A stretch of 64,000 nucleotides of DNA from Macrostomum lignano. Taxonomy: Eukaryota. Numbering within the stretch: position 1 is the stretch's first letter; every line of letters starts with the position of its first letter. The DNA lies in assembly GCA_002269645.1 (NCBI GenBank), contig NIVC01000186.1:652001-716000 (forward strand), read 5' to 3'. Below are positions 18,983 through 48,300 of the stretch, in pieces. The notes beneath the pieces are model-generated. The model was not told the origin of the DNA and searched no databases. It saw only the letters and a list, made by a program, of their open reading frames with translations. Position numbers and translations under genes: made by a program.

Positions 18983-21900
18983 CATAGTTGCCACCCCTGC
19001 TCAAATTTTGAGCAATTGCTCAAAAAAATTTAAGCTGCTCAAATGCTCAATTTTATTTGGTTCTGCTCAAAAAAGTAATTATTTTTTTGCTTGTCTATTT
19101 TTTACTTCTATTGCTAAAAAGTCATTCTAAATAAAGTAAGAAAGGTCAAAATGATTCTTGTTCCTTCTTTTTGGGTCATTAGTTTTGTAATTTTCTCTAT
19201 AAACTTATACGTATAAGTCTATGTATAAGTATATTATATGTATAAGTAGTGAAAGTACTAAAGTGGGAATCTAGGGAAGTAGTAGTTTAGGTACTACGCT
19301 CGTATAAAATTCAAGTCACATTTCAGCCACATTCTAATGCCCACTGATCGAAAAACGAAGTGGAATGCTACCTGGTTATCTGAACATGACCATTCTGGGG
19401 TCAAAATATCACGATGGTGCCAGAAAGACGACGACAATGACGATGAAGCCACATGTAGATTGTGCAACCGTGGAGTAAATTTTCGTCAACATGGCATTGC
19501 TGCTTTGCGACAACATGCTGATGGTGCAAAGCACAAGGCTCTTTCTCGGGCTATGGTTGCTGCTTACAGTCAGCAAAAAATCAATGCTTTTTTCCCAATC
19601 ACTCCATCTGAGAACCAACAACTAAAAAAAGTGGAGGCAGAGGCATCTTTGCCCCAACAGACCATGGCGGCGAGCCTACGATTCGGACTGCTTGTTGTTC
19701 GGAAAGACCTATCATTCAAAACTATGGACGAAATTTCTGAAACACTGCCTGTTGCTATTCCTGATAGCAGTGTTGCTCAGAACTTTTCATGTGGAAGAAC
19801 CAAGACAACGTACCTGGTCACTGATGCACTTGCCCCACATGCTAAGGAGGAAATGTTTAAGAGCCTTCGTGACTCTCCCTTTTCAATTCTGCTTGATGAG
19901 GGCACGAAACGTGACCGCTGCTGGCTGGTTTTACTGGCCCGCACTTTCTGCATTGAAAGGCAGAAGGTAATTCTTGTCTACATTGGTTCAGAGGAGCTTA
20001 AAAATTCATCGGCGTCAAATATGAAGGACACAGTTTTGTCGTTGCTATCCCAAGCCAAATTGCCTGCAAGGAATGTTATTTCCGTGATGACAGATTCCTG
20101 CAATGCAATGAGAGGTATGCGAGATAGCTTGATGAGTAATCCTTGTTGACAAAGATCCTGTCCCTAAAATAATTCACCTTTCACATTTCAGGCATCCACA
20201 ATGGACTTCTCACCAAGCTGAAAGATGCTATGCCGCAGCTTATTGATGTTGGAGGCTGCAGTCTCCATCATGTACATAATAGTGTTCAATATGCAACTAA
20301 GGCATTTGACAGCACTGGCGAGGCTGAAGGACTGATGGATGATGTCTATAACTATTTCCGATTTGTGAAAAGGCGCGGAGCATTCCATGAGGTATGAATT
20401 TAAACTTTGCTTAATCTTGAATGTGCTTTTCTTCCCTGACAAAAATTAAAATTTTTAGATTCAGGATGCACTGGACCTGGCTGAACACGTGTTCATCCGC
20501 CGAGTCGAAACTCGCTGGCTCCAGATTCTAAACGTCATTCGACGGATTCTAGAGCAATGGGAGGCCCTGAAGCTGCACTTTGAGAAAGCTAGTGCCTCAG
20601 AACTGGACAACATTCGGGCACGACGAATCAAGCTGGCCCTTACTGATGAGATGCTAGCCAAGCTCCAGTTCTTAAGCCAAGTGCTGCCAAGATGCGAAGC
20701 ATTCGAGAAAATTTTTCAGCGGGAGAGCACTCAGGTTCACCACTTGGCTTCTTCGCTGGAAAAGCTTTTTAGTGACATTCTTCTTTGCTTCATGCGGAGT
20801 GAAGTTGTTGAAAACAGCCGCTCTCTTTCAGACCTGGTTGACAGGGCTACTGATCGCAACAATCAACTAATGAACAAAGATCTAATCATCGGCTCGGCCA
20901 CCCGTGAGACTGTTGCACGGTTACGTCAGATGGAGCAGATTGGCTTTTTTAAGTCAGTTCGCTGCTTCTTTTCTGAAATTATTAGTCGACTGTTTGCCTA
21001 CTTACCTTTCAACAACAAGGTGCTTTCTGGCCTTCAGTTTGTGGATCCTGAATACATGTTGGGATCAGACTTCAACTTTGACAACAGCATTCTACGTGTT
21101 GGGCGTGCTATGAGCACAGTCATTTCTGCCGACTTGCTGGATGATATCCGGCTGGAAGCTACAAGGCTTCGACTGACCTGCCCAACTGAGAAAGCAAAGG
21201 AGACACCAGAGGCTTTTTGGGCACAGCTTTCTGTTGAAGATTATCCTCATCTTTCTAAACTAGGTCGTGCTGCCTGCTGCATACCGCACGGTAATGCAGA
21301 TAGTGAACGAGTTTTGAAATGGGTGGCCAACAACTTGACCAAGCAGCGCAATAGGCTAGGAGAAGTTACGCTGGACTCGATTTTGGCTGTGAAAGTTTGG
21401 ATGAAATGCAACAGCACTGGCCCAGCCAAGGTCACTATTGATTCTAACCTGCTGGACACAGCTTTTCAAGCCAAAAGCAAAGCCGATGAGCGACGACGAG
21501 CTAAGCAAAACGAAAAGGCCATGAAGCGACTTCAGCAAGCACTGGAGGAGCAGCGACGACTGGTTACTGAAAAGGAGAAAGAGCTCCAGCAGCAGAAGCA
21601 ACAAAAGCAGGCAGAGGCCCAAACAAAGATTGACGAAATGCGCAAGAAGGCTCAGGACATGCTCGCACTTGCTGATAAGGAGGAGCATGCCCTACGCAAG
21701 CGGCATGGTGACAGTGAAGAAGCAAAATCAAAGAAGAAGAAGAAATGACTATGTTTGTACATTTTATCAGCTTAAAATTTACTGAATGTTTGTAGTAACT
21801 ATAACTCTAAGCTTCATGCTGTAGTCTTTATTGTCTGAGGTGCTTCTTTTTATTTTTGTCTGCGCAACTTGAAACAATTTTCCTTGTACATGTAAACCAT

Positions 21901-22034
21901 TTTTGTTTTCGAATTTACTAAATGTCTGTCATAGTGAAAAGAAAAACTGGTTTGTGGGAAGGATGCGAGTTTTTGACCTGCGCTAAAAATTAGTCCTTGC
22001 GCTACTTTTCTTCAAAAACTGGGTGGCAACTATG
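18983..22034 (+). mobile_element. Complete 3052-bp hAT DNA transposon
   Basis: Perfect 14-bp TIRs CATAGTTGCCACCC (18983-18996) / GGGTGGCAACTATG (22021-22034); 8-bp TSD GATGGCGA (18975-18982, 22035-22042). Confidence 0.95.
19337..21748 (+). CDS. Intact hAT transposase, 3 exons, 755 aa
   Basis: Exons 19337-20114, 20192-20391, 20459-21748 splice in frame with GT-AG; BED-like CRLC..H....H, ILLDEG, VMTDS, CSLH, TRWL, IPHGNADSERV; coiled-coil/basic tail ending KKKKK. Confidence 0.9.
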
Positions 22035-22327
22035 GATGGCGATTAGGCGACGAAGGAAGCGCTTAACTTTTCTTGATCTGCTGCTATTCGAAAGCGAGAC
22101 TGGTGCCAAGCTAACCGATTCGGACATTCGGGAGGAGGTGGACACCTTCATGTTCGAGGGCCACGACACCACTGCCGCCGCTATGACCTGGTGCCTGTTC
22201 CTGCTGGGCCGGCATCCCGACGTCCAGGCCGAGGTGCACAAGGAAATCGACGCCATCTGGGAAGAGGTATCAGTCTGTCTGTGCTGTATTTCTCAGGTTC
22301 AACCAAAACTGTACTCCGTGATTACTT

Positions 22328-23140
22328 CAGATCCTCCGATAGGCTACCAGAACTCGCAGATCCTCAGGTTGGGCTACCAGAACTCTCAGATCCTCCAATT
22401 GGACTACCAGAACTCTCAGATCCTCCAATTGGACTACCAGAACTCTCAGATCCTCAGATTGGACTACCAGAACTCTCAGATCCTCATACTGGGCTACCAG
22501 AAGCCTTCAGATCCTCAGACTGAGCTACCAGGACTCTCAGATCCTCAGACTGAGCTACCAGAACTCTCAGATCCTCAAATTGGGCTACCAGAACTCTCAG
22601 ATCCTCAAATTGGGCTACCAGAACTCGCAGATCCTCAGGTTGGGCTACCAGAACTCTCAGATCCTCCAATTGGACTACCAGAACTCTCAGATCCTCCAAT
22701 TGGACTACCAGAACTCTCAGATCCTCCAATTGGACTACCAGAACTCTCAGATCCTCAGATTGGACTACCAGAACTCTCAGATCCTCATACTGGGCTACCA
22801 GAAGCCTTCAGATCCTCAGACTGAGCTACCAGGACTCTCAGATCCTCAGACTGAGCTACCAGAACTCTCAGATCCTCAAATTGGGCTACCAGAACTCTCA
22901 GATCCTCAAATTGGGCTACCAGAACCCGTAGATCCTCAAATTGGGCTACCAGAAGCCTTCAGATCCTCAGACTGAGCTACCAGAAGCCTTTAGATCCTCA
23001 GACTGAGCTACCAGAAGCCTTCAGATCCTCAGACTGAGCTACCAGAACTCTCAGATCCTCAAATTGGGCTACCAGAACTCTCAGATCCTCAAATTGGGCT
23101 ACCAGAAGCCTTCAGCTGCTCAGACTGAGCTACCAGAAGC
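22328..23140. repeat. 30-bp minisatellite (CTACCAGAACTCTCAGATCCTCAAATTGGG) filling the last CYP4 intron
   Basis: Tandem units between donor 22267 and acceptor 23195. Confidence 0.95.
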
Positions 23141-24716: not shown

Positions 24717-25420
24717 ATGGACCCTTTACACGTGACCTGTGTGCCATTTTTATTACTTTGCCAAATGATTTTTTCAGTAAATAGCTAATTTTTATAAATT
24801 TATCGTTCTCTTATTGTCTCGGCTCAAAAAGTTTTGTCATAGAATAATTCGATTCTATTTCGTCATATAATTAGTCATAGTAGATCATTATGCAAGTCAT
24901 GACCAGATTTTTTAATCCTATCCTTTTACATTTTTTATACGATTGGCTTGAGTATTGAGTCGTTGTCGCAGCACAGAATTATTTGCATCCATTCTAATCC
25001 TTTCTAATTCCGTATAGATCATGCGTTTGTTGTCCCCGATTTCAAACTTTTGTTCCAATTTTAAAATAAAATAAATCAATAAATTTTTATATATTGATTT
25101 TCATCTTGATGCAGATGTTGCTGTTGATCAGTGTTTACTTTTTATTTGAAAATTAACTCTTAGGCGACTCTTTGATGATTTTTGGCGATCGTGACATCTC
25201 GTCCTTTTTAGGGTCGTGTAGAGTCACTTCTTTCCTATTTCACCTGTGTTGCTTGCAATGACTCTGGATCGACGCAAGTTGCTCTTTGGCATTGGTACTG
25301 TTTTCATAACCCATGAAAACCCAAGATAACCCACCCCATTATCCTTAATATATCAATCCCGTAGTTAAATAGTGATTCTGCTGCTAATTGAGGTCCTACT
25401 TTGATGCTAATCCGGTTTCC

Positions 25421-26347
25421 ATGGCGGAGCGCTCGGCCGCCTATCAGCTTCATCATGTGCAGCATCAGCAGCAACAACAACAGCAGCATCTGCAGACTCG
25501 CGTTAGCGATCATGCCTTCTGGGAGCAGGAGATGCGCGCGATTCAAGCCATCCCATCGGAACTGTCTGCATTCAAAAGCGCGGAGTTGCCGTTGGCTCGA
25601 ATCAAAAAGATTATGAAATTAGATGACGATGTTAAGACTATGATGATCGCAGCCGAGGCCCCGCTATTGTTCTCCAAGGCGGCTGAGATCTTCATTCGCG
25701 AGCTCACCTATCGAGCCTGGATGCACACAGAGCGGGCCAGACGGCGGACTCTTCAGCGTAACGATATTGCGCTAAGCGTTGGCGATCCGGAAACTGATCA
25801 ATTCGACTTTCTTATCGACATTGTGCCGAGAGATACGCCGCCGCCGTCGCTTCCGCCTCATCAGCAGCATCAGATGGCGCATTATCAACAGCAAACAGCA
25901 ATTGCTGGGCATAACAGCGCCAGCGCCGGTAGCAGCAGCAAGAATAACAATAATCACAATACTAATAATAATATTAATAAGTCCACTTCATCCTCGGCCG
26001 GCTCCTCGGCATCATCAACAATGGCGGCTGTGATCAGCAGCGGCGGTGGCTCGGCGCCAGTTCAATACGTTATCCAATTGCCAGTTGGTGCGGCTGCTGG
26101 TGGCCAGCTGGTTGGAGGCAGTGCCGGCCTGCAAGTTCAGTCACAGTCTCAGCAGCAGCAGCCGATGCAGATCTTCATCAGTCATCAGGAGGCCGCTGCA
26201 GCTGCCGCCGCTGCCGCTCCTACATCCGTAACGGTTTCTACTAGCATCCAGCCGGTTGACGTTAAGCCAATCATTACAACCGCGACGATGGTCAGTTCCT
26301 CAGCGACATCATCTGCTGCTGGTCCACCTGCACATGCCCAACTGTAG
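25421..26347 (+). CDS. NFYC: Nuclear transcription factor Y subunit gamma (NF-YC), single coding exon
   Basis: Histone fold [42 protein letters not shown]...[21 protein letters not shown]; Q/S/A-rich tail. First ATG at 25421 (the ORF track starts at TTG). Confidence 0.93.
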
Positions 26348-29236: not shown

Positions 29237-30639
29237 ATGCTTCCCGGCCAGGGGGATGGTGATCAACAGCGGCAGCAGCCGGCTGTACTGAAAATCACTC
29301 CAACAAAAGCCGAGCTCATTAGAGAGTTCAGCTGTCCGGAATTTCCGCTAGTATGCACTCTGTGCAATTTGCCATTCCGTTCCACTAGCAATCTGCGCTT
29401 TCACATGGTCAAGACTCACCGCTGCTCTGATCCGAGCGCCGCTCTGGCCGCGGCCGTGTCAGCGGCTCCGGAAATCAAGCGCTACCATTGTCCGGAGATC
29501 AACTGTCCGTATAGCGAGTTGCGGGGAGAGTTTTTTACAACTCTGTCTAGAGTTAAACAGGTTAGATGTTTTTTATTTTCGGCTTCGTGTGAGATGAGTT
29601 ACAGAATCTCCACGGCAGTGTCAGCAGGGAATTCCCTGCAGTGTCAGCAGGGAATCCCCCTAGCAGTGTCAGCAGGGAATCCCCCCTAGCAGTGTCAGCA
29701 GGGAATCCCCCCTAGCAGTGTCAGCAGAAAATCCCCCAGAAGTTTCAGCAGGGAATCCCCCCTAGCAGTGTCAGCAGGGAATCCCCTAGCAGTATTAGCA
29801 GGGAATCCTCCTAGCAGTGTCAGCAGGAAATCCCTTAAACAATTTCCAAACGCTCAATCCTGCAGCACTACAGCTGGAAGCACGTGGAGAAGAAATCCCA
29901 GTGCCGCTACTGTTCCCGCCGCTTCCCATCCGACTCTCTGCTCGGCCTTCACCTGCGCGACTGCGGCAGATTCTTCAATTGTGAAGAGTGCTCCCGGTTC
30001 TATCGGGATTTGAAAAACTTGCGCAGCCACTTCAAGAAGACTGGCCACGGCGCTAACAGCATCTTCAATCAGCGCCAACGACGCAGGCCGCAGTGCCGCG
30101 GACTGAAGAATGAACAGCGGCGGACTGGCAACGCCGAAGACGTTGATCTGGACGATCGAGTTGTTCAGAGTCCCGCCGCAGCCAGCGGCTTCGGTGGCGA
30201 CGTCAGCGCGTCGCTCGCCAGTGCTCCGGCCGTCAGTGAGTCGCCAAAGCCAATGAACCTGGTGATTGTGCTCACCGGCCTTGGCGGCGGCGCTCCCTCA
30301 GCCTCGGTGATGTCCGTCTCAGCTGATGCGGCCGCCGCCGCGGCTAAAGCTACGGCTGCCAGCAGCGCTAACGCCAGCGCTAATGCTAACAATGCATCGG
30401 GCCCAACAAGCCGTTACCGGCCGCTGGTGCCCCGGCCGCTGCCAACTGAGACCCGAGCCTGCCAGACAGACTCGGCCCTGACTAATGAGTTTCACCCGCC
30501 GTCTTACCTGTACAGCCAGCAGCAGCCAATGCTGTACAGGGCGCATCATCACACTGGCCCAGTGATGGTGCACGATCATGCCAGCTTCCGGGGCTCCAGC
30601 TGTTCCAATTTTGCTGTTGTGTCATTTCAAGATTCCAAT

Positions 30640-30682
<43 letters not shown>

Positions 30683-31041
30683 GCACTATGCATACTCAGA
30701 CAGAGTACACTTCTCCTATTGCTACGGATGGTTACTCTGTTGGGGTCCAGTACTCTTATCAGCAGCAGCAGCAGCAACAGCAGGCGACTCAATCGTCTCA
30801 ATCCAACAATTCCGGCATAACTCAAGGCGTCTGCGTTGGCTCCGGCGCCTCACCGCCCATCACTCTGGGCATTCAGGCTGGCCCAGATCCGCTTGAGCAG
30901 CTGCTCGACATGGAGACTCAAACTAACGACGCGTTCGGCAGCGGCTTTGCCGGCTGCGAGATGGAAACTCAAACTTACGAAGAGTTCGACTGGGAGACCG
31001 TGTTCGGCATTGTTAATCGGCGCTCCACTGGTGTGGGATAA
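29237..31041 (+). CDS. ATMIN: ATM interactor (ATMIN/ASCIZ) zinc-finger protein, 2 exons, 499 aa
   Basis: Exons 29237-29560 and 29866-31041; YHCP..NCP..F.TLSRVKQ|HYSWKHVEKK..C..C..H..DCGR.F.C..C..Y.....L.SH.KKTGH; dynein light chain LC8-type motifs ACQTD, HTQTE, ETQTN, ETQTY. Confidence 0.87.
29615..29830. repeat. ~23-24-bp minisatellite (GCAGTGTCAGCAGGGAATCCCCCTA-like) in the ATMIN intron
   Basis: Tandem units inside intron 29561-29865. Confidence 0.9.
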
Positions 31042-34717: not shown

Positions 34718-34806
<89 letters not shown>

Positions 34807-34829
34807 GGCTGTCTGTCTGGCTGTCTGGC

Positions 34830-34881
<52 letters not shown>

Positions 34882-34926
34882 CATCTATCTATCTATCTGT
34901 TTATCCATCCATCCATCTATCTGTCC

Positions 34927-35018
<92 letters not shown>

Positions 35019-35048
35019 GTTCATCCATCCATCCATCCATCTATCAAG

Positions 35049-35125
<77 letters not shown>

Positions 35126-35150
35126 CATCTATCTGTTCATCCATCCATCC

Positions 35151-35242
<92 letters not shown>

Positions 35243-35534
35243 CTCTGTCTATCGACATTCGTTTCTCTCGCTATCCGCCTGCACCGGAGCGGTTACGAAA
35301 ATTAGATTTCTCGGTAGTTGCACGTACTCTTTTGCACTACTTGAGTAGTCTGATTTTCGTTCGGCATAGCTGGTTCCAGCAGGTAGTTCCTCTGGATAAA
35401 AGCGCTTACCGCGCCCATTGGCTTTCCAGCTGCCTTAATCGTTTCCGGTGATCTTGTGTGCGTGCTTTCAGCTTGATTGGCTGCGGCAAGCAAGCTCGAA
35501 AGAGCTCGCTTCGCTCGCTCTTTCTCGCTATCTA

Positions 35535-35620: not shown

Positions 35621-36477
35621 GCTCCCTGGAGACGACGCGCTTGCACCTTCACCTGTATTGATTCTCAGGCTTTGCTTGCATCTTTTCACAATATGCGCCG
35701 TACCCACGGCGGCAGAGGTTGGCGCAAGAAATCTGATACCGCTAGATTCCGGTAGAATTCCCATGAAGTGCCCAAGTTTAGTAACTGACTGGCAACGAGT
35801 CAACACGCCAAGCAACAGCAGCAGGCTTTACGGCATCCGCTGTTTTCTGCCCCCCCCCCTCCTCTCTCCCTCTCTCTGTCTCTTCTCTCGGGCGATCCTG
35901 TCAATAACTGCGAGAGCCGAGTCAGCCAGCCAGCCAGCCTGATGGCTGCTCGGACATCCCTGAGCACGCAATTCGCATGGGAATAGGTAGCTATGGAGTT
36001 TGGCTGACACGGATAAGCGCAAGGCATTAGAGCATCGCCCTGAGCCTGCTCGTGTCGGGCCATCCTCACCTAATGGAAATCCACTAATTGGCACGAAGTG
36101 TTGAGTGGGTAGCGGATAGCTTCAGCGACCAGTTGTTGAGTAGGGGATGGGGGGAGACGATTCGGGATGAGTTATCACCTTGCAGACCTGAGACAGGTGA
36201 ATGTGAGCTGGTTTTGCAATTTCATTTCAGATCATTTACCTAGTACTCGATTTCAAGGCGTGCAATACGGCTCTGGGCATTTTAATTGCGATCACAAGTG
36301 TGCGTCACTACTTTCTGCTTCATCTATATGGCTTTCATTGCCTATCTGAAGCACATGGATGTTTTGATGATCAAAATTTTTATCCACAGAAAAATGTGCG
36401 CTCAAAATTATCTGCACTGTCATTCCATCAGCTTTGGTAGAAGTAATTGGTGGCATTTCTGAGTCACTCAAGCATGC

Positions 36478-37340
36478 TTGGTCATCTGGGGAGATTTCTG
36501 AGCACTGCCACTCCAGCATCCCTGGTCATCTGGGGAGATTTCTGAGCACTGTCAGTCCAGCATTCTTGGTCATCTGGAGAGCTTTCTGAGCAGTGTCACT
36601 CCAGCATCCTTGTTCATCTGAAGAGATTTCTGAGCAGTGTCACTCCAGCATCTGTGGTCATCTGGAGAGATTTCTGAGCAGTGTCACTCCAGCATCCTTG
36701 GTCATCTGGAGAGAATTCTGAGCACTGCCACTCCAGCATCTGTGGTCATCTGGAGAGATTTCTGAGCACTGTCAGTCCAGCATCTGGTCACCTGGGGAGA
36801 TTTCTGAGCACTGTCAGTCCAGCATGTTTAGTCATCTGGGGAGATTTCTGAGCACTGTCACTCCAGCATCTGTGGTCATCTAGAGAGATTTCTGAGCACT
36901 GCCACTCCAGCATCCTTGGTCATCTGGAGAGATTTCTGAGTACTGCCACTCCAGCATCCTTGGTCATCTGGAGAGATTTCTGAGCACTGCCACTCCAGCA
37001 TCCTTGGTCATCTGGAGAGATTTCTGAGCACTGCCACTCCAGCATCCTTGGTCATCTGGAGAGATTTCTGAGCACTGCCACTCCAGCATCCCTGGTCATC
37101 TGGAGAGATTTCTGAGCAGTGCCACTCCAGCATCCTTGTTCATCTGGAGAGATTTCTGAGGAGTGTCACTCCAGCATCTGTGGTCATCTGGAGAGATTTC
37201 TGAGCACTGCCACTCCAGCATCCTTAGTCATCTGGGGAGATTTCTGAGCACTGTCAGTCCAGCATCATTGGTCATCTGGAGAGATTTCTGAGCAGTGTCA
37301 CTCCAGCATCTGTGGTCATCTGGAGAGATTTCTGAGTACT
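36478..37340. repeat. 44-bp minisatellite upstream of the prepropeptide gene
   Basis: Unit GAGATTTCTGAGCACTGCCACTCCAGCATCCTTGGTCATCTGGA. Confidence 0.95.
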
Positions 37341-37555
37341 GTTACACGTTGGCATTCGGCCGTCTCCGCTCTGATTGGCTGATAGCCATCTGGACCTGTT
37401 CCATCCCCCGCAAATGAGGAGGCGATGCCTATTATAATCCTCTGCGGAAGTTGCTTTCACAGTGCGCGATTCCTGGCAGCAAAACAGCTTATAGACTCAC
37501 CACTGGTCCATAAAGCAACGGAGAAAATATCTGATCTGCATAAACGACTGAGACG

Positions 37556-38000
37556 ATGAAGCTGATCACTGTGCTGCTGGTTGCTTTGATTGGTAAGCAA
37601 AACTGATCCAAGAATATCCTCTTGAGTTGGGTATAAAGTTTCCCTTATGAATTATGGATTACAAGGAACCATTAAAATTACAGCCGCCGCAGCCATCTGT
37701 AGCGCCCGTCCACTGGAGGTGCGCCGATTTGGGTGAGGAAAATTCAGTTTTGATGATGATGCATGACTTGTACTTCTAAGAAATCATCTGAACAACCTGC
37801 AACTGCCCCGCAGAGGCAAGCGCTGGTGGCCCGTGAAGTACTATGACGCTGACAACATCCAGGTGAAGAGAGTTGGCCACGGCAGGCCCTCCCTGGAGCT
37901 GCCAGCCAGCGCCTGGGATAATTATCCCGATTCCTACATTAGCAAGCGCTGGTGGCCCGTGAATCCACACGAAGGATCCGGCAATAGGCGGCGTCGTTAA
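37556..38000 (+). CDS. Secreted prepropeptide (neuropeptide-precursor-like), 3 exons, 101 aa
   Basis: Exons 37556-37592, 37684-37732, 37781-38000 (GTAAGC/TTACAG; GTGAGG/TCTAAG) give MKLITVLLVALIAAAAICSARPLEVRRFGNHLNNLQLPRRGKRWWPVKYYDADNIQVKRVGHGRPSLELPASAWDNYPDSYISKRWWPVNPHEGSGNRRRR*. Confidence 0.78.
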
Positions 38001-40959
38001 GGATTGAAGCTGCGTCTGTGCGGAGCTGCAAATTGATGAACTCTCGAAATGTCTAAACAGAATTGCCCACAGCTTGTTGCGTCCCCCCACCCAGCCGTAC
38101 GTTGGCTGCCTCCCATGTCTCTGTCGATCTCCTTGAAATCTCCTCAATGCGGCTTGCAAATGAAAACCCGCCACGAAACCTGCTTTGAGATTTCTTAGTC
38201 TCAAATAGACGGCATTGGAAACTCGGCTTGAGAGCCTTCTAATTGAAAAGGCACAGCTTTACACTATTGCTACTGGCTTATTCCCAAGTCTTCGTTGCTT
38301 CAAGCCTCTTTAAAATAGTCTGATTGATTGATTTCGAGTTTCTCCAACGCTTAGTCTGAGTGTTGATCCAATAGCTTCGGAATTGTAGCGGGAAGGGTTT
38401 AAGAAACAGTTGGAAAAAAGCAATACTTTAAAATAGATAACCAGCTACTTAAGGCAAAAGAAGACCAAACCGAATTACATGGGGTCTTTGCATTTGGCAT
38501 GCCAATCATAAGTCGAAAGTAGTATAAAAGCACTGGCTTTTCTAGTATTACCTGTGGTTCGGCGAAATAGACAGGTAGGACAGCTGCTCCTGGCCCTGTA
38601 GCTTTCTTAGAGAGCCCTAGAAAATCTGGATTAGGACCTCGTAAATAACGCGGCAGAAAGGCGCAGGGAGATGCTGTGACGGTAGTCGTATAGAAATTTA
38701 TAGATGTCTAAAAACTGCTGCATAGCTCATATTTCGTTCACGAAGCATGAGAAAGTTCTAGATGATTTGCATGGTGATTACGAGTACAGGTGAACAACAC
38801 GTCCTTACAATCCTACATGTAAAGGCGATTCAGATAGCCTTAGAAGCAAATAAACAAATGTCTCTATAGAATTTCCATGTGATTCATAATAAGAATGAGC
38901 GGAAAACATTGCATTGAACCAGAGGACACCAAGTGGCAGCTTTACTCCAACTCTGGCCATAACTCTTCAGTCTCTCCTCACCAGCCTAAGCTGGGGAAGC
39001 CAATTTGTGATTGCGTCACTCACAGTTGACGAAAACCACAGGTGTGGTATATGAATTACGTCACTTGGGACTGAGATGAGGAAATTTGACTACTGTTTCG
39101 GGTGGAAACTTAAAAATCTGGCCGAGTTCCTCCATCACTGTACTAAGACTGAGTACGACGTCGTTACAAGTTATTTATATCTACATTACATCTACGAGAA
39201 TAATTGATTGATTTCAGAAAAAAACAGCCCAACGAATTTTCATGAAACTTGCACCATTCGATTAGACAATTTCCGGTGACGCTACGGGTCGTGGCTAAGA
39301 AATGTCTTAATGATCAGGATATTACATATTAAAAAAACATGTTTTTTTGCAAAGTTTGAGCAGAATTGTTCTCCACTACTAGGCATTTCGATTAGAGTTG
39401 AATGATGATTGCATCATAAGACAGCGCCTGGTAACTCAGCAGACGCCGGCCTGAATTGCGTAACAATTGCAACTTAGACTTGATTTAGACTGCGTCGACC
39501 CTTTAGTTAACTGTAATAGAGACTGATACTGACTGCTTGAGAACTTTATTATGCCATAACTGCTTCCTGTAATTTTTACTCTAAGCGGCTTGATGAGAGA
39601 ACTAATTCATAAGCAATTAATTAGTCGTTTCCACTCTACTAAATTGATGAGATGTCATGACTTACGAGGGGATTGCTGAGCTGTCAAGGCAAAGGATTCA
39701 CAAAAATAAATTTCATCCCTTTCTTACTGGTCGCCCCAAAGGGGGGCATTATTTTTGTGCTAGTCCACTATACTAAAAATGGTTTGGCTCTAGATATCTA
39801 TCTACCTAGTAAAGTGCTACAATGAACGAAAGTTAGCCTAGATGAGAGCAGACTGAACTGCTAATGCAGCTACCTGAGTTGGAATTTTGATCATATAAAA
39901 TTATTTTTATTAAAAGCTTTCATCAACTGAAGCAGACTTAACAAAAAGAAAATAACTTAACATAAAAGAATCACCTTGTCAACCACAGAAGACTCATGGA
40001 GAAATTGCTGAAATCTCGTTCATGCAGGGGGGGGGATTGCTAAAATGCTGTGACTCACGGGAAAAGGGTTGCTCAGATGCCAGGGATCAATTGGGAGTTA
40101 GTAGGCTAAGTATCGAAGGGAGAGTCATGGTTGAGCGATGTCTTAAAGGGAGGCTTTGATCCCAAAGCTCATAGGAGATGCTGATAGCTTAGCCCAGATA
40201 GCTGGATTTCAGGGCGGATGCTTCTTTGCTTCAAACATGATTTTCCTTTAAAAAACTAACAATATAGTGGCTGTACAAGGCCAAAAGCTACATGTAACTT
40301 ATTCAAAAATATTTATTCTCTTGCTTTGCTGCTTTCCCTATCGGGCTGCGCAGATTGCTAGTGTATTTCTATATATAGCTGCTTCTGCTGCTAATATATG
40401 ATGTAACTTAATCAGTAAAACATCTACTGTAGTCTAGCTATAGTAAATCGGAGAAATTTTGCATCTGCAACATGATTGTAGCTTTTGAATCGAGTCAATC
40501 ATCTTCGTCTCAAAGATTTCATCAAGTCACTTCATCGAAACAGGAAGTTTTTTTAATAAGAAAAGTCACTTTTTCGTGCTAAACGGAAGAGAGTGAAATT
40601 TGAATTACAAAGCAAACAGCAGCGCTTTACAAGGAAGCGTGGAACATATACCAGCTGTTTGGTGATCCAAGTGTACTCGTAGCCAGCATTGCTCTGTGCA
40701 GTGGGCAAACATTTGCCAACACGGATACACGCCGATGTAGGCCTACTGGAAGCTTGGTGTCAACTTCTGTAGCGTTTGCAACGACAGGACACGCATAGTG
40801 TCACATTGACCGTCGACTGCAAACCGTGACATCAAGTTTTCCACTGTTGCTCTATTCCTGGAAGCTTTCGTGAAGATATACTCTCGAGAATTGCACAGTG
40901 CATGCTTGGAACAAGTGAAACAATTGCCTCATTTGTTCGTCGCATGTTCCCAAAGTGTA

Positions 40960-42714: not shown

Positions 42715-45700
42715 TCAAAAGTTCGATTGCCGTTTTTTGCCCGCCTGCACCGGCGGCGGCCCAAGATGACGCTGTTGCTGTTGCTGTGGGTTCCGCGGCT
42801 TCAGAGGCTGGGCGGACAAGGCGATGGCCGGCTTGTGCTGCTGCTGAGGCGGTCGCTTCATTGGCTGCGCTTGCAGCGCCTGAGGGGCGGCTGATTTCTG
42901 CGGCTGCGGCTGCGCGGGCTGGCTGGCCACTGTCAAGCTGCCAAATGAGGCTTCTTCGCCGGTTTCGCTGGGATACTGGGCCGCTACACTACTGTTGGCC
43001 AGACTGGCGCGTGGCTTCGGTACCGGTGGCTGCTGCTGCGGCTGCGGCTGCTGCTGCTGCGGCTGCGGCTGCTGCTGCTGCGGCTGCTGCTGCTGCTGCT
43101 GCTTCTGCTGCCGAGGTCTGACCGGTTGAGCGTGGATAGCATTGGGCGGCGGACGAACCGGCGGCTCACTGAACAGTGACCGGGCCGCCACGCTTGGCAA
43201 AGACGACTCCGATGGCGGCCTGTTGAGCCCGTTGACGCCCCCGCAAGTGCCTGGCGGCTCGCTGAACAGCGAGTGCCGGCTGTTGTACACCGAGGAGCCC
43301 GACCGGAGCGGCTGGGACGTCAGCAGAGACTGCTGATGGCCGCCGCGCAAGCTGCCAACTACGCTGCCTGATAAATGACGTTGAAGCGTGCGGCATCGTA
43401 AGTAGTTGTCATGGAAATTCCTAATGACCTTGAGGGAATCCCGCAATAAGGCTAGAGTGTCGGATGAATCGGTGATCTTGGGAAATATCTTGGAACCTTG
43501 GAAAACGCATGAGCGGTTGGGAATTATTAATGATCTTGGAACTCACTCAATGACTTTGAGATTCACCGAACGTCCCTACGGAAAGTTTAATAATCTTATA
43601 AATTTCTCCACAACATTGGAAATCTCTTTGCGACCTTGAAAATCTCTCAATGACCTTGGGAATTCCTCAAAAACATTTGGGGTCTCTTAGCGACCTTGGA
43701 AATCTATCAATGACCTTGGGAATTCCTCATAAAATTAGGGGATCTCTTAGCGACCTTGGAAATCTCTCGATGACCTTGGGAATTCCTTATAAAATTGGGG
43801 GATCTCTTAGCGACCTTGGAAATCTCTCGATGACCTTAGGAATTCCTCATAAAATTGGGGATCTCTTAGCGACCTTGGAAATCTCTCGATGACCTTGGGA
43901 ATTCCTCATAAAATTGGGGATCTCTTAGCGACCTTGGAAATCTCTCGATGACCTTGGGAATTCTTCATAAAATTGGGGGATCTCTTAGCGACCTTTGGAA
44001 GTTTTGCAGTAACCTTGGGAATCTGTCAGTAACTTTGAGAATCTCTCAACTTTGTTCAAGTTTCTACGATTGAAGATGAAATATTGTTACCTGGCCTCGA
44101 GTTGCCAAATTGTTGTTCCCGCTGTTTCTGCTTCAGCTGATTGCCTGCCTGCTGTCTGCAGCTCTGCACCAGGCCGAAAGCAACGGGGCCGGCGGCCAGA
44201 ACGGCACCAAAAAACACCAACACGCCGACGATAATGTGCCGATTACTGAAGGCCTCCAAGTCGGCAGTGCAGGCCTCAAAACAGCCGATAGGATGCATGT
44301 AGGGATTCTCTGAGGGCACGGCCGGCCGGTTGTTGGTGCAGTCGGCCAGTTTGGCCGGGTCGGCGTGCGCCTCTGCGGTGCAGCAGCTGTCCGGAATGTT
44401 TGGCGTCGTGTGCGGTGTGCCTTCGCTGAGCTGGCGGTACCAGGGCGTGTTCTTGTAGGCCTGGAGGAGGGCGGGTTGAGTGCTACCTACTCAGCAATGG
44501 GCCGCGACGTCATGAGGAACTCAAAAAAGGCCAACGAGTACTTGCAAGTAATGATAGAAACACCTGTGTGTGCTTGAGTCTTGAGTCCTGGAGTGCTTGT
44601 GCTTGAGTGCTTGAGTCCCATTCACACATCTGTGTGTGTGCTTGAGCTCACTGTCCCATTCACACATCTGTGTGTGTGCTAGAGCTCACTGTCCCATTCA
44701 CACACCTGTGTGTGTGCTAGAGCTCACTGTCCCATTCACACATCTGTGTGTGTGCTTGAGCTCACTCTCCCATTCACACCTGTGTGTGTGCTTGAGCTCA
44801 CTGTCCCATTCACACCTGTGTGTGTGCTTGAGCTCACTGTCCCATTCACACCTGTGTGTGTGCTTGAGCTCACTGTCCCATTCACACACCTGTGTGTGTG
44901 CTTGAGCTCACTGTCCCATTCACACACCTGTGTGTGTGCTTGAGCTCACTGTCCCATTCACACACCTGTGTGTGTGCTTGAGCTCACTGTCCCATTCACA
45001 CACCTGTGTGTGTGCTTGATCTCACTCTCCCATTCACACACCTGTGTGTGTGCTAGAGCTCACTGTCCCATTCACACACCTGTGTGTGTGCTTGAGCTCA
45101 CTGTCCCATTCACACACCTGTGTGTCTGCTTGAGCTCACTGTCCCATTCACACACCTGTATGTGTGCTTGAGCTCACTGTCCCATTCACACACCTGTGTG
45201 TGTGCTAGAGCTCACTGTCCCATTCACACATGTGTGTGTGCTTGAGCTCACTGTCCCGTTCACACGTGTGTGTGCTAGAGCTCACTGTCCCATTCACACA
45301 TGTGTGTGTGCTTGAGCTCACTGTCCCGTTCACACATGTGTGTGTGCTTGAGCTCACTGTCCCGTTCACACATGTGTGTGTGCTTGAGCTCACCCTCCCC
45401 ATTCCAACTTTAGAAGTACACAAGCACTTGAAGTCTCACCATCTGAGCCCTGTTGGTGCGGACAGCGCAGCACTTGGCATCTTTCTGCAGCTGGTTCCAG
45501 GCCTCGTACAGAGCCGTATCGCTCGGGCCGTACCGCTGCAGCGAGCTGTCCAGGCTGGCCTCCAGCCCGGTCTGGGCGCTGCCGGCCTTCAAGCTGCCAG
45601 CCAGCCCCAGCGCGGCCAAAGCCAGAACAGCCGCCAAGGCCAGGGTGATACAGGCGGCAAGGTCCAGGCCTCGATTCCCGTACAGCTGGCTGATTAATGC

Positions 45701-45913
45701 GGTCAGAGCGGCCAGGACAACCAGGCCAGCAGCCGCCATGTCCAGGTACATCGGTACATAGGCAGAGTCAGCGTAGCTCAGCACCGGCCGCAGGCTTCTG
45801 GCTGGACCCTGGACGGTGAGGGCGAGGCCCATGGCGGCGAGGCAGAGGACGATGCCCAGCACGCACAGGGCCAGAGTGGCCGCTCGCAGTTTCGGACTCG
45901 ACGTCTTGCGCAT
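42715..45913 (-). CDS. Tetraspanin-like four-TM protein with long low-complexity C-tail, 3 exons, 498 aa
   Basis: Exons 45913-45440 (GCCATG start), 44460-44091, 43367-42715 join in frame; three N-terminal TMs, large extracellular loop (EC2) with KCCA..IPDSCC..C..GCF, fourth TM IIVGVLVFFGAVLAAGPVAFGLV. Confidence 0.8.
43625..44045. repeat. 60-bp minisatellite in tetraspanin intron 2
   Basis: Units recur at a 60-nt period (ATCTCTTAGCGACCTTGGAAATCTCTCGATGACCTTGGGAATTCC...). Confidence 0.92.
44615..45395. repeat. 36-38-bp minisatellite in tetraspanin intron 1 (block 1)
   Basis: Unit CTTGAGCTCACTGTCCCATTCACACACCTGTGTGTGTG; same unit at 47673-48300. Confidence 0.95.
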
Positions 45914-47672: not shown

Positions 47673-48300
47673 GTGTGCTTGAGCTCACTGTCCCATTCAC
47701 ACATCTGTGTGTGTGCTTGAGCTCACTGTCCCATTCACACATCTGTGTGTGTGCTTGAGCTCACTGTCCCATTCACACACCTGTGTGTGTGCTAGAGCTC
47801 ACTGTCCCATTCACACACCTGTGTGTGTGCTAGAGCTCACTGTCCCATTCACACATCTGTGTGTGTGCTAGAGCTCACTGTCCCATTCACACATCTGTGT
47901 GTGTGCTTGAGCTCACTGTCCCATTCACACACCTGTGTGTGTGCTTGAGCTCACTGTCCCATTCACACATCTGTGTGTGTGCTTGAGCTCACTGTCCCAT
48001 TCACACATCTGTGTGTGTGCTTGAGCTCACTGTCCCATTCACACATCTGTGTGTGTGCTTGAGCTCACTGTCCCATTCACACATCTGTGTGTGTGCTTGA
48101 GCTCACTGTCCCATTCACACACCTGTGTGTGTGTGCTTGAGCTCACTGTCCCATTCACACACCTGTGTGTGTGCTTGAGCTCACTGTCCCATTCACACAC
48201 CTGTGTGTGTGCTTGAGCTCACTGTCCCATTCACACACATGGGTGTTTGATCTCACTCTCCCATTCACACACCGGTGTGTGTGCTTGAGCTCACTCTCCC
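47673..48300. repeat. 36-38-bp minisatellite, block 2
   Basis: Same unit and orientation as 44615-45395. Confidence 0.95.

What the first reader, a model, noticed from the sequence alone, without database searches (positions are those of the whole stretch)
37556..38000. Unannotated neuropeptide-like precursor releasing two N-terminal WWPV peptides
Invisible in the ORF track because of short exons. It has a signal peptide (probable cleavage after CSA), a GKR amidation site, two more KR sites and a terminal RRRR. Predicted products: ...LQLPRR-amide, WWPVKYYDADNIQV, a 24-aa spacer, and WWPVNPHEGSGN. The KR-WWPV unit is a 22-nt internal repeat (37816-37837, 37942-37963). The shared motif is N-terminal and non-amidated, unlike MIP/Wamide peptides, and I recognise no family. 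A second in-frame acceptor 33 nt downstream (37813) would change the first peptide to ...RRFG-GKR, so alternative splicing could switch the amidated product.
Basis: partly seen in the sequence, partly recalled or inferred. Interest (0 to 1): 0.75.

Follow-up and report, generated by a model that had tools for sequence, protein, structure and literature searches.

The report
Orphan flatworm prohormone-like gene, WWPV peptides
This is a real, RNA-supported three-exon gene of the flatworm Macrostomum lignano, already in GenBank as a "hypothetical protein"; it looks like a small secreted peptide-hormone precursor with no known relatives, but nobody has shown where it is expressed or whether its peptides are made.

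Summary
The window is the last 64 kb of Macrostomum lignano scaffold NIVC01000186.1. Exons 37556-37592, 37684-37732 and 37781 or 37814 to 38000, with GT..AG introns, give a 101-aa or a 90-aa secreted protein. Both carry GKR, two more KR sites, a terminal RRRR and two KR-WWPV units encoded by an exact 22-nt repeat.

Two corrections:
- The gene is not unannotated. The 90-aa form, which uses the downstream acceptor, is GenBank PAA58252.1/PAA83139.1/PAA88489.1 (Mlig007078, "hypothetical protein"). That annotation was built from RNA-seq, and the gene sits on three near-identical loci.
The supported N-terminal product would be RPLEVRRFG-amide.

No homologue was found in 5.8 billion clustered proteins, in 1.84 billion representatives read by HMMER, in Pfam, in JGI metagenomes, or in the planarian prohormone supplements.

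Basic residues cluster into cleavage-type pairs (shuffle p about 0.004-0.008), and the peptides between them are acidic.

Best reading: a lineage-restricted, convertase-processed peptide precursor, probably neuropeptide-like. This is a new member of a known kind. Tissue, processing and function are untested. Interest is moderate.

The parts
36463..37342 (.). Array of 20 copies of a 44-nt minisatellite. It ends about 30 nt before the promoter elements. Context only; not shown to be functional.
   Evidence: TRF score 1368, 90% matches. The copies vary between the three genomic loci.
37374..37437 (+). Putative core promoter: an inverted CCAAT box (CTGATTGGCT; ATTGG at 37374) and a TATA-like TATTATAA at 37430. 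These lie about 180 and 125 nt upstream of the ATG.
   Evidence: Motif scan. The segment 37343-37555 has 1 variable column in 213 among the three loci. Its function as a promoter is inferred.
37556..37592 (+). Exon 1 (coding part): start codon and the first 12.3 codons of the signal peptide. The donor is G|GTAAGC.
   Evidence: Identical in the GenBank models of L001-L003.
37593..37683 (+). Intron 1 (91 nt, GT..AG, phase 1, GC 0.33).
   Evidence: L001 carries a 7-nt insertion here.
37684..37732 (+). Exon 2: the rest of the signal peptide (cleavage predicted after ...CSA, codon ending at 37706) plus RPLEVRRFG.
37733..37780 (+). Core of intron 2 (GTGAGG...CTAAG, GC 0.35). A YTNAY branch-like TTGAT lies at 37750.
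   Evidence: There are 2 SNP columns among the loci.
37781..37813 (+). Alternative 33-nt segment. It is intronic in the GenBank model (acceptor CAG ending at 37813). If the upstream AAG acceptor were used it would be coding and add NHLNNLQLPRR. It contains the CTGAA branch-like motif (37788) for the downstream acceptor.
   Evidence: GC 0.52, GC3 0.64. The 101-aa product is not in public collections.
37814..38000 (+). Common part of exon 3: G-GKR / WWPVKYYDADNIQV / KR / 24-aa spacer / KR / WWPVNPHEGSGN / RRRR / TAA.
   Evidence: One synonymous SNP (37871, AGA/AGG) among the three loci.
37816..37837 (+). Copy 1 of the exact 22-nt repeat, encoding (G)KRWWPV(K).
37942..37963 (+). Copy 2 of the exact 22-nt repeat, encoding (S)KRWWPV(N).

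Best explanation
This is Mlig007078, a small, lineage-restricted Macrostomum lignano gene. It encodes a secretory pre-propeptide that is cut by prohormone-convertase-type enzymes.

Proposed mechanism (inferred except where marked):
1. The 20-residue signal peptide is removed after ...AICSA.
2. A PC2-like convertase cuts after GKR and SKR. Both sites are followed by Trp, a context that is almost always cleaved in invertebrate precursors. M. lignano has a PC2 homologue, and its knock-down is lethal to juveniles (shown by others).
3. Cleavage after VKR is less certain, because that site is followed by Val.
4. A carboxypeptidase trims the basic residues, including the C-terminal RRRR. Peptidylglycine amidating enzyme converts ...RRFG-G to RPLEVRRFG-amide in the annotated 90-aa isoform, or ...LQLPRR-G to ...LQLPRR-amide if the upstream acceptor is ever used.

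The main products are two acidic, non-amidated peptides of 12 and 14 residues that begin with Trp-Trp-Pro-Val. The first may stay joined to the 24-aa spacer as a 40-mer.

The peptides would act as extracellular signals. Neuropeptide or peptide-hormone signalling is the most likely role.

Shown here: gene structure, an RNA-derived annotation, three intact copies, the motif anatomy, and the absence of relatives. Inferred: secretion, cleavage, amidation, cell type and signalling role.
For: 1. The gene is real and spliced.
- The 90-aa CDS equals GenBank PAA58252.1/PAA83139.1/PAA88489.1 on three loci of assembly GCA_002269645.1.
- That annotation was built from RNA-seq with StringTie/TACO plus a de novo transcriptome (PMC5730564).

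2. The protein looks secreted.
- The N-terminus has a 15-residue hydrophobic core (KD 3.0) followed by C-S-A.
- AlphaFold models only this helix with moderate confidence. The rest has pLDDT below 56 and pTM is 0.24, as expected for an unfolded propeptide.
- The mature part has no Cys and no Pfam domain.

3. Basic residues are concentrated in pairs or runs.
- There are 7-8 overlapping dibasic pairs; the shuffle p is 0.004-0.008.
- Only 3 basic residues are isolated, p = 0.001-0.004.
- The mature protein has pI 10.7-11.1, yet every inter-site peptide has pI 4.2-5.2. This is the classic prohormone layout.

4. A Gly precedes the first KR, which is an amidation signal.

5. Both WWPV units follow KR directly and end 12-14 residues later at another basic run.

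6. There is weak evidence of constraint. The CDS has 1 synonymous and 0 non-synonymous variable columns in 273, against about 2% in the 3' flank (12/600 and 42/1573). The Poisson probability is about 0.03.

7. Flatworm neuropeptide precursors are commonly genus- or class-restricted and include non-amidated multi-copy peptides, e.g. Sm-npp-33 and Sm-npp-26 (PMC9495596).

8. M. lignano has a nervous-system-expressed PC2 homologue needed for development (PMC4490696).
Against: - There is no orthologue or paralogue anywhere. The usual proof, conservation of the peptides and their cleavage sites across species, is therefore missing.
- There are only two copies, and they share only four residues.
- The 22-nt identity includes all synonymous sites (p about 0.01 under independent codon choice). 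This suggests a young micro-duplication or conversion rather than long-term selection on a bioactive core.
- No expression site, peptidomic evidence or receptor is known.
- Mlig007078 does not occur in any searchable paper, nor in the held supplements of five M. lignano expression studies.
- The WWPV peptides are neither amidated nor cationic and resemble no known ligand.
- The signal peptide and cleavage sites were judged by rules, not by SignalP or NeuroPred.
Confidence: 0.5

Rival explanations
1. The gene encodes a secreted peptide or small protein made by a non-neural gland: prostate/seminal fluid, an adhesive, rhabdite or pharyngeal gland, or a host-defence peptide. The product acts outside the animal or in the mating partner. 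It would be processed by furin/kexin-type enzymes or not at all. The Trp/Arg-rich uncleaved protein (5 Trp, pI 10.7) could act on membranes like Trp-rich cationic antimicrobial peptides.
For: - The same signal peptide and dibasic anatomy fit.
- M. lignano has many orphan, rapidly evolving secreted gland products. For example, 76 transcripts are prostate-limited, most are predicted to be secreted, and several have no homologues (PMC5977470).
- Orphan status and a young internal repeat are typical of reproductive and defence genes.
- The uncleaved mature protein is strongly basic and Trp-rich.
Against: - After cleavage the WWPV peptides are acidic (pI 4.2 and 5.2), unlike cationic antimicrobial peptides.
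- A G-KR amidation signal and basic residues confined to cleavage sites are more typical of regulated-pathway prohormones.
- The gene ID was not found in the held supplements of the reproduction-focused expression papers. This is weak evidence, because the files are partial and some use other ID systems.
Confidence: 0.27
2. This is a young, taxon-restricted transcript whose short ORF has no selected function. The signal-like start, the KR pairs and the WWPV repeat would be accidents of a recent micro-duplication in GC-rich sequence.
For: - There is no homologue in any database.
- The 22-nt repeat is identical at every synonymous site, as expected for a recent DNA event.
- The three genomic copies are too similar (about 2% in the flanks) to prove purifying selection.
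- The region is embedded in minisatellite-rich DNA.
Against: - Several independent features coincide: canonical splice sites, a hydrophobic leader with a -3/-1 site, clustering of basic residues (p < 0.01), Gly before the first KR, and both repeat copies placed exactly after KR.
- The ORF is intact with no amino-acid change in all three copies, although about 5 substitutions would be expected at the flank rate.
- The transcript was assembled from RNA-seq.
- CCAAT-like and TATA-like promoter elements are present.
Confidence: 0.15
3. The real coding sequence lies on the minus strand: the 142-aa ORF at 37776-38204, antisense to exon 3.
For: A 142-aa open frame exists there.
Against: - It starts with TTG, has no ATG and has no signal or domain features.
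- The introns are canonical GT..AG only on the plus strand.
- The public RNA-based models are on the plus strand.
- Long antisense frames are a common by-product of GC3-rich codons (GC3 0.68).
Confidence: 0.02

Closest known systems
Flatworm neuropeptide precursors (npp/spp genes of Schmidtea, Schistosoma and cestodes: McVeigh 2009, Collins 2010, Koziol 2016)
   Same: - Short pre-propeptide: signal peptide, KR/RR-flanked short peptides, a G-KR amidation site, no cysteines or domains.
- Lineage restriction is usual in this group, and it includes non-amidated multi-copy peptides such as Sm-npp-26 xFDPI[LI][FY]-OH.
   Different: - No sequence relative among them.
- No WWP, KRWW, RRWW or PRRG[KR] string in the held planarian prohormone supplements or in the S. 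mansoni npp paper.
- Only two paracopies.
- No peptidomic or in situ hybridisation support.
Opioid-type and orcokinin-type precursors (peptides that share an N-terminal 'message' motif, e.g. YGGF... or NFDEIDR...)
   Same: The conserved residues of the paracopies sit directly after the dibasic site at the peptide N-terminus, with variable, non-amidated C-terminal tails. Basis: own knowledge of those families. This is an analogy only.
   Different: No sequence similarity, a different motif (WWPV) and no evidence of a receptor. Not a member.
MIP / allatostatin-B / 'WWamide' (W-X6-W-amide) peptides
   Same: Trp-rich and spiralian, which is why the name invites comparison.
   Different: The defining C-terminal Trp-amide (W-G-[KR][KR]) is absent. 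Here the Trp residues are N-terminal and adjacent, and the peptides end in V, S or N without Gly.
PRXamide peptides (pyrokinin / small cardioactive peptide / neuromedin-U type)
   Same: The hypothetical 101-aa isoform would end its first peptide in ...Q-L-P-R-R-amide, which is P-R-X-amide in form.
   Different: - The motif is present only with the upstream acceptor, which public models do not use.
- There is no aromatic residue at the F-X-P-R-X position.
- X = Arg is atypical.
- No precursor homology.
Trp-rich cationic antimicrobial peptides (indolicidin/tritrpticin type)
   Same: The protein contains short W-W-P and V-R-R-F strings, and the uncleaved mature protein is basic (pI 10.7) with 5 Trp.
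   Different: - Those are cathelicidin-derived, 13-residue, strongly cationic peptides.
- The predicted WWPV peptides here are acidic.
- No cathelin domain.
- The resemblance is recalled from memory and was not tested.

Membership tests
Proneuropeptide / prohormone (generic class) | N-terminal signal peptide for entry into the secretory pathway | tested here: met
   Met by rule-based analysis only. The n-region is MK, the h-region LITVLLVALIAAAAI has KD 3.0, and the c-region C-S-A satisfies the -3/-1 rule. AlphaFold models a helix at residues 3-17. SignalP was not available.
Proneuropeptide / prohormone (generic class) | Short peptides flanked by dibasic convertase sites, with basic residues concentrated at those sites | tested here: met
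   Three KR sites, one or two RR sites and a terminal RRRR. Clustering versus 100,000 shuffles gives p = 0.004-0.008, and the isolated-basic count gives p = 0.001-0.004.
Proneuropeptide / prohormone (generic class) | C-terminal Gly before a basic site (amidation signal) | tested here: met
   G-K-R at 37815-23. It would give RPLEVRRFG-NH2 from the 90-aa form or ...LQLPRR-NH2 from the 101-aa form. Amidation itself is not testable here.
Proneuropeptide / prohormone (generic class) | Conservation of the peptides and cleavage sites in orthologues of related species | tested here: inconclusive
   No orthologue exists in any searchable collection. Genomes and transcriptomes of other Macrostomum species are not in these collections, so absence is not shown.
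Proneuropeptide / prohormone (generic class) | Expression in neurons or endocrine cells, and detection of the mature peptides | not testable with these tools
   No expression or peptidomic data are reachable. The gene ID is absent from the searchable literature and from held supplements.
MIP / allatostatin-B / Wamide | Peptides ending in Trp-amide (W-G-basic), usually W-X6-W-amide | tested here: not met
   The precursor has no W-G-[KR] anywhere, and its Trp residues are N-terminal and adjacent.
FMRFamide-like / RFamide peptides | Peptide ending in Arg-Phe-amide (R-F-G-basic) | tested here: not met
   The 90-aa form has R-F-G-G-K-R, which would give ...RFG-amide, not RF-amide. The 101-aa form has RFGNH....
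PRXamide (pyrokinin/SCP/NMU type) | C-terminal F/Y-X-P-R-X-amide on transcript-supported peptides | tested here: inconclusive
   L-P-R-R-G-KR exists only in the upstream-acceptor isoform, which is not in public records. The aromatic position is Gln. No precursor homology.
Described flatworm npp/spp families | Sequence similarity of the precursor or the mature peptide motif to a named family | tested here: not met
   phmmer against 1.84 billion representatives and the word-indexed 5.8 billion clusters returned only the protein itself. The motif strings are absent from the Collins 2010 supplements and the S. mansoni npp paper. McVeigh 2009 and Koziol 2016 could not be read.

The most novel reading that the evidence does not exclude
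Mlig007078 founds a Macrostomum-specific neuropeptide family whose peptides carry an N-terminal Trp-Trp-Pro-Val 'message' with free, variable C-termini. A pair of in-frame acceptors 33 nt apart switches the co-released amidated peptide between RPLEVRRFG-amide and ...NHLNNLQLPRR-amide. One tiny gene would then give two different peptide cocktails.
Probability: 0.2. Interest if true: 0.55.

Novelty: new member of a known kind. Interest (0 to 1): 0.35.

Why it matters
M. lignano is the flatworm in which transgenesis and RNAi work. I found no dedicated M. lignano neuropeptidome study in the searchable library, and prohormone processing (pc2) is essential for its development. A transcript-supported orphan precursor with clear cleavage anatomy is a cheap, testable candidate for a new ligand. 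The tests are in situ hybridisation, RNAi, peptidomics and receptor matching. It would also add an example of an N-terminal-motif peptide family in Spiralia. If it turns out to be a gland or seminal product, it is instead one more fast-evolving secreted orphan. Either way it is a modest addition, not a new principle.

Tried and rejected
- **Homology searches, all empty apart from the protein itself:**
  - word-indexed search of 5.8 billion clusters;
  - full phmmer against 1.84 billion representatives;
  - Pfam at E <= 10;
  - JGI metagenome scan with exon-3 peptide patterns: 412 pattern hits, none confirmed.
- **Exact look-up of the 101-aa isoform:** not in the collection.
- **Literature:**
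  - 'WWPV' gave only irrelevant hits.
  - KRWW/RWWP/WWP gave noise.
  - 'Mlig007078' is in no main text.
  - It is not in the held supplements of PMC5816591, PMC7336406, PMC5946080, PMC12896417 or PMC5730564. PMC10786194 has no supplements held.
  - Two searches for an M. lignano neuropeptidome or single-cell paper found none.
  - McVeigh 2009 (PMC2749192) is not held.
- **Structure:** the single-sequence AlphaFold model has low confidence (pLDDT 54, pTM 0.24), so no fold search was run. Its pairing of the two KRWWPV segments as strands is not trustworthy.
- **Rfam:** no match in the window.
- **Selection test:** the three loci are about 98-99% identical, so dN/dS is not informative. Only a weak Poisson argument is possible.
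- **Other WWP strings:** those in translations of the 30-nt minisatellite at 59018-59745, and single ones at 26098 and 5573, are coincidences.
- **Antisense ORF 37776-38204:** rejected as a by-product.

Full report
**Where the window comes from**

A protein search with the spliced product returned one hit, 'hypothetical protein BOX15_Mlig007078g1 [Macrostomum lignano]'. Looking up its encoding contigs gave three loci of assembly GCA_002269645.1 (Mlig_3_7), L001-L003. The window is identical to L003 over the gene plus or minus 3 kb. The window is therefore NIVC01000186.1:652001-716000, and window coordinate = L003 coordinate + 27555.

The neighbours are the same at all three loci:
- a C2H2 zinc-finger gene upstream (window about 29237-31041, + strand);
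- a tetraspanin gene downstream (about 42715-45913, - strand).

**Checking the observation**

- The ATG is at 37556. It has an in-frame stop five codons upstream and A at -3.
- Exon 1 is 37556-37592, followed by GTAAGC.
- Exon 2 is 37684-37732, preceded by ...TTACAG and followed by GTGAGG.
- Exon 3 runs to the TAA at 37998-38000. It starts at 37781 (after CTAAG) or 37814 (after CCCCGCAG).
- Both versions are in frame.

The products are:
- 101 aa: MKLITVLLVALIAAAAICSARPLEVRRFGNHLNNLQLPRRGKRWWPVKYYDADNIQVKRVGHGRPSLELPASAWDNYPDSYISKRWWPVNPHEGSGNRRRR;
- 90 aa: the same, but with ...EVRRFGGKRWWPV....

The 22-nt repeat GCAAGCGCTGGTGGCCCGTGAA occurs at 37816-37837 and 37942-37963. It is exact, does not extend by a base, and has no other copy in the window with up to 3 mismatches. 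The only coordinate correction is that 37813 is the last intron base.

**The gene is already annotated, in the 'second' isoform**

P0001 (PAA58252.1, PAA83139.1, PAA88489.1; UniProt A0A267GT56) is exactly the 90-aa downstream-acceptor product.

The GenBank annotation of Mlig_3_7 is a genome-guided transcriptome built from RNA-seq with StringTie and TACO plus a de novo assembly. It was filtered only for alternative transcripts with identical CDS (PMC5730564). Two things follow:
- The upstream-acceptor isoform, which has a different CDS, was not assembled at any of the three loci.

The 101-aa sequence is also absent from the 15-billion-protein collection. The N-terminal amidated product supported by public data is therefore RPLEVRRFG-amide, not ...LQLPRR-amide.

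The upstream acceptor remains possible on sequence grounds:
- It is the first AG 27 nt downstream of a YTNAY motif (TTGAT, 37750).
- The 33 nt are open in frame.
- Their composition is exon-like (GC 0.52, GC3 0.64). The true intron parts have GC 0.33-0.35, and the CDS has GC3 0.68.

An open, in-frame 33-mer has a chance probability of about 0.2, so this is only a hint. The downstream CAG acceptor has its own branch-like CTGAA at 37788.

**Is the prohormone-like anatomy more than chance?**

- The N-terminus has a 15-residue hydrophobic core (mean Kyte-Doolittle 3.0) followed by C-S-A, which satisfies the -3/-1 rule.
- The mature part has no Cys.
- In 100,000 shuffles of the mature sequence, the number of dibasic pairs (7-8) is reached with p = 0.004-0.008.
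- The low number of isolated basic residues (3 of 15-17) is reached with p = 0.001-0.004.
- The mature protein has pI 10.7-11.1, but each predicted inter-site peptide is acidic (pI 4.2-5.2). The positive charge therefore sits almost wholly in the cleavage sites.
- Pfam finds nothing at E <= 10.
- AlphaFold without an alignment gives pLDDT 54 and pTM 0.24. Only the signal helix is moderately confident. That fits an unstructured propeptide but proves little.

Rules established for invertebrate precursors (Veenstra 2000, recalled from memory) say the following:
- KR not followed by an aliphatic or basic residue is almost always cleaved.
- KR followed by an aliphatic residue is ambiguous.
- RR sites are ambiguous.

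By these rules GKR|WW and SKR|WW are strong sites. VKR|V and VRR|F are uncertain, so the first WWPV peptide may persist as a 40-mer joined to the spacer.

**Relatives**

None were found.
- The word-indexed search of 5.8 billion clusters had only four candidates, and only the protein itself had E <= 10. This also means that no annotated protein shares several of the KRWWP/RWWPV words.
- A full HMMER pass over 1.84 billion representatives found only the protein itself.
- A pattern scan of JGI metagenomes confirmed nothing.
- The strings WWP, KRWW, RRWW and PRRG[KR] are absent from the held supplements of the planarian prohormone paper and from a Schistosoma npp paper.
- 'WWPV' appears in no neuropeptide paper.

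Genomes and transcriptomes of other Macrostomum species are not in any collection I could search. 'Orphan' therefore means 'no relative outside M. lignano in what is searchable'.

**The three genomic copies**

M. lignano DV1 carries large recent duplications. Across L001-L003 the variable columns are:
- CDS: 1 in 273, a synonymous AGA/AGG at 37871 in the second KR;
- 37343-37555: 1 in 213;
- the 48-nt intron core: 2 SNPs;
- intron 1: a 7-nt indel;
- 3' flank: about 2% (12/600 and 42/1573).

At 2%, about 5.5 changes would be expected in the CDS, and the probability of seeing 1 or fewer is about 0.03. This is weak evidence of constraint and nothing more.

**An unexplained detail**

The two KR-WWPV units are identical at every synonymous site, while the sequence on both sides shares nothing. 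With local codon usage, identical K, R, P and V codons by independent choice have p of about 0.013. Peptide-level selection alone does not predict this. A young micro-duplication or a short gene-conversion tract is the simplest explanation. This weakens the argument that the shared WWPV reflects long-term selection on a bioactive core.

**Mechanism and rivals**

The best-supported reading (confidence about 0.5) is a lineage-restricted secretory peptide precursor.
- It would be processed at its KR sites by a PC2-type convertase. M. lignano has a nervous-system-expressed pc2 homologue that is essential for juvenile development (PMC4490696).
- It would be trimmed by a carboxypeptidase and amidated at the single Gly-KR.
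- It would release two N-terminal-WWPV peptides and one short amidated peptide as extracellular signals.

The rivals are:
- **A non-neural gland, seminal or defence product (0.27).** M. lignano has many orphan secreted prostate transcripts (PMC5977470). However, the cleaved WWPV peptides are acidic, unlike cationic antimicrobial peptides.
- **A young functionless ORF (0.15).**
- **The antisense 142-aa ORF (0.02).** It has a TTG start, and the splice sites are canonical only on the + strand.

**Comparison with known families**

It works like a flatworm npp/spp precursor. Such precursors are often genus- or class-restricted and include non-amidated multi-copy peptides such as Sm-npp-26 and Sm-npp-33. 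It is not a member of any named family:
- The MIP/Wamide criterion (C-terminal W-amide) is not met.
- The RFamide criterion is not met, because R-F-G-G-KR would give RFG-amide.
- The PRXamide form exists only in the unsupported isoform.

The N-terminal shared motif has analogies, such as opioid YGGF and orcokinins. These are analogies from my own knowledge, not homology.

**Verdict**

This is a real gene with a real prohormone-like layout and no described family. It is a new member of a known kind, of moderate interest (0.35).

No step had to be referred.

Noticed in passing
window 36463-37342: A 44-nt minisatellite of 20 copies at 90% identity. It ends about 30 nt before the inverted CCAAT box of the gene's putative promoter. 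The unit variants differ between the three genomic loci.
   Followed up: partly
window 37816-37837 and 37942-37963: The two KR-WWPV coding units are identical at all synonymous sites (p about 0.013 under local codon usage), while the flanks share nothing. This suggests a young micro-duplication or a short conversion tract rather than ancient paracopies.
   Followed up: yes
window 37776-38204 (- strand): A 142-aa open frame (TTG start, no ATG) lies antisense to exon 3 and the 3' UTR. It is probably a by-product of GC3-rich sense codons.
   Followed up: partly
window 44615-45393 and 47673-48300: Two arrays of the same 38-nt minisatellite unit (rotated), 21 and 16.6 copies, lie 2.3 kb apart. The first falls inside the span of the tetraspanin gene (42715-45913, - strand).
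   Followed up: no
window 1-64000: The window is unusually dense in minisatellites: TRF reports 30 rows with score >= 300 and periods of 17-75 nt. It also has a (TCTA)133 microsatellite at 34720-35253 and a purine-rich GAGGGA(GA) tract at 56418-57403, which explains the GC-skew spike at 56-58 kb. This agrees with the published figure of 15% simple and tandem repeats in this genome.
   Followed up: partly
window 20489-21748 (+), 21997-22824 (+), 25388-26347 (+): Three ORFs carry domain hits: a hAT transposase C-terminal dimerisation domain (E 3.8e-7); a cytochrome P450 fragment (E 2.6e-20) that runs into a 30-nt tandem array, producing a spurious 'extensin' hit; and an NF-YB/histone-fold domain (E 3.7e-14).
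   Followed up: no
window 59018-59745 (- strand): Translations of a 30-nt minisatellite read ...CWWPASQIL... in all three frames. This is a coincidental WWP string unrelated to the finding.
   Followed up: yes
L001 10001-10452 versus L002/L003: The three genomic copies of the gene differ by a 7-nt insertion (TTATGAA) in intron 1 of L001 and an 8-nt indel in the 3' flank (window about 38113). They encode identical proteins. This fits the recent large-scale duplication reported for the DV1 line.
   Followed up: yes
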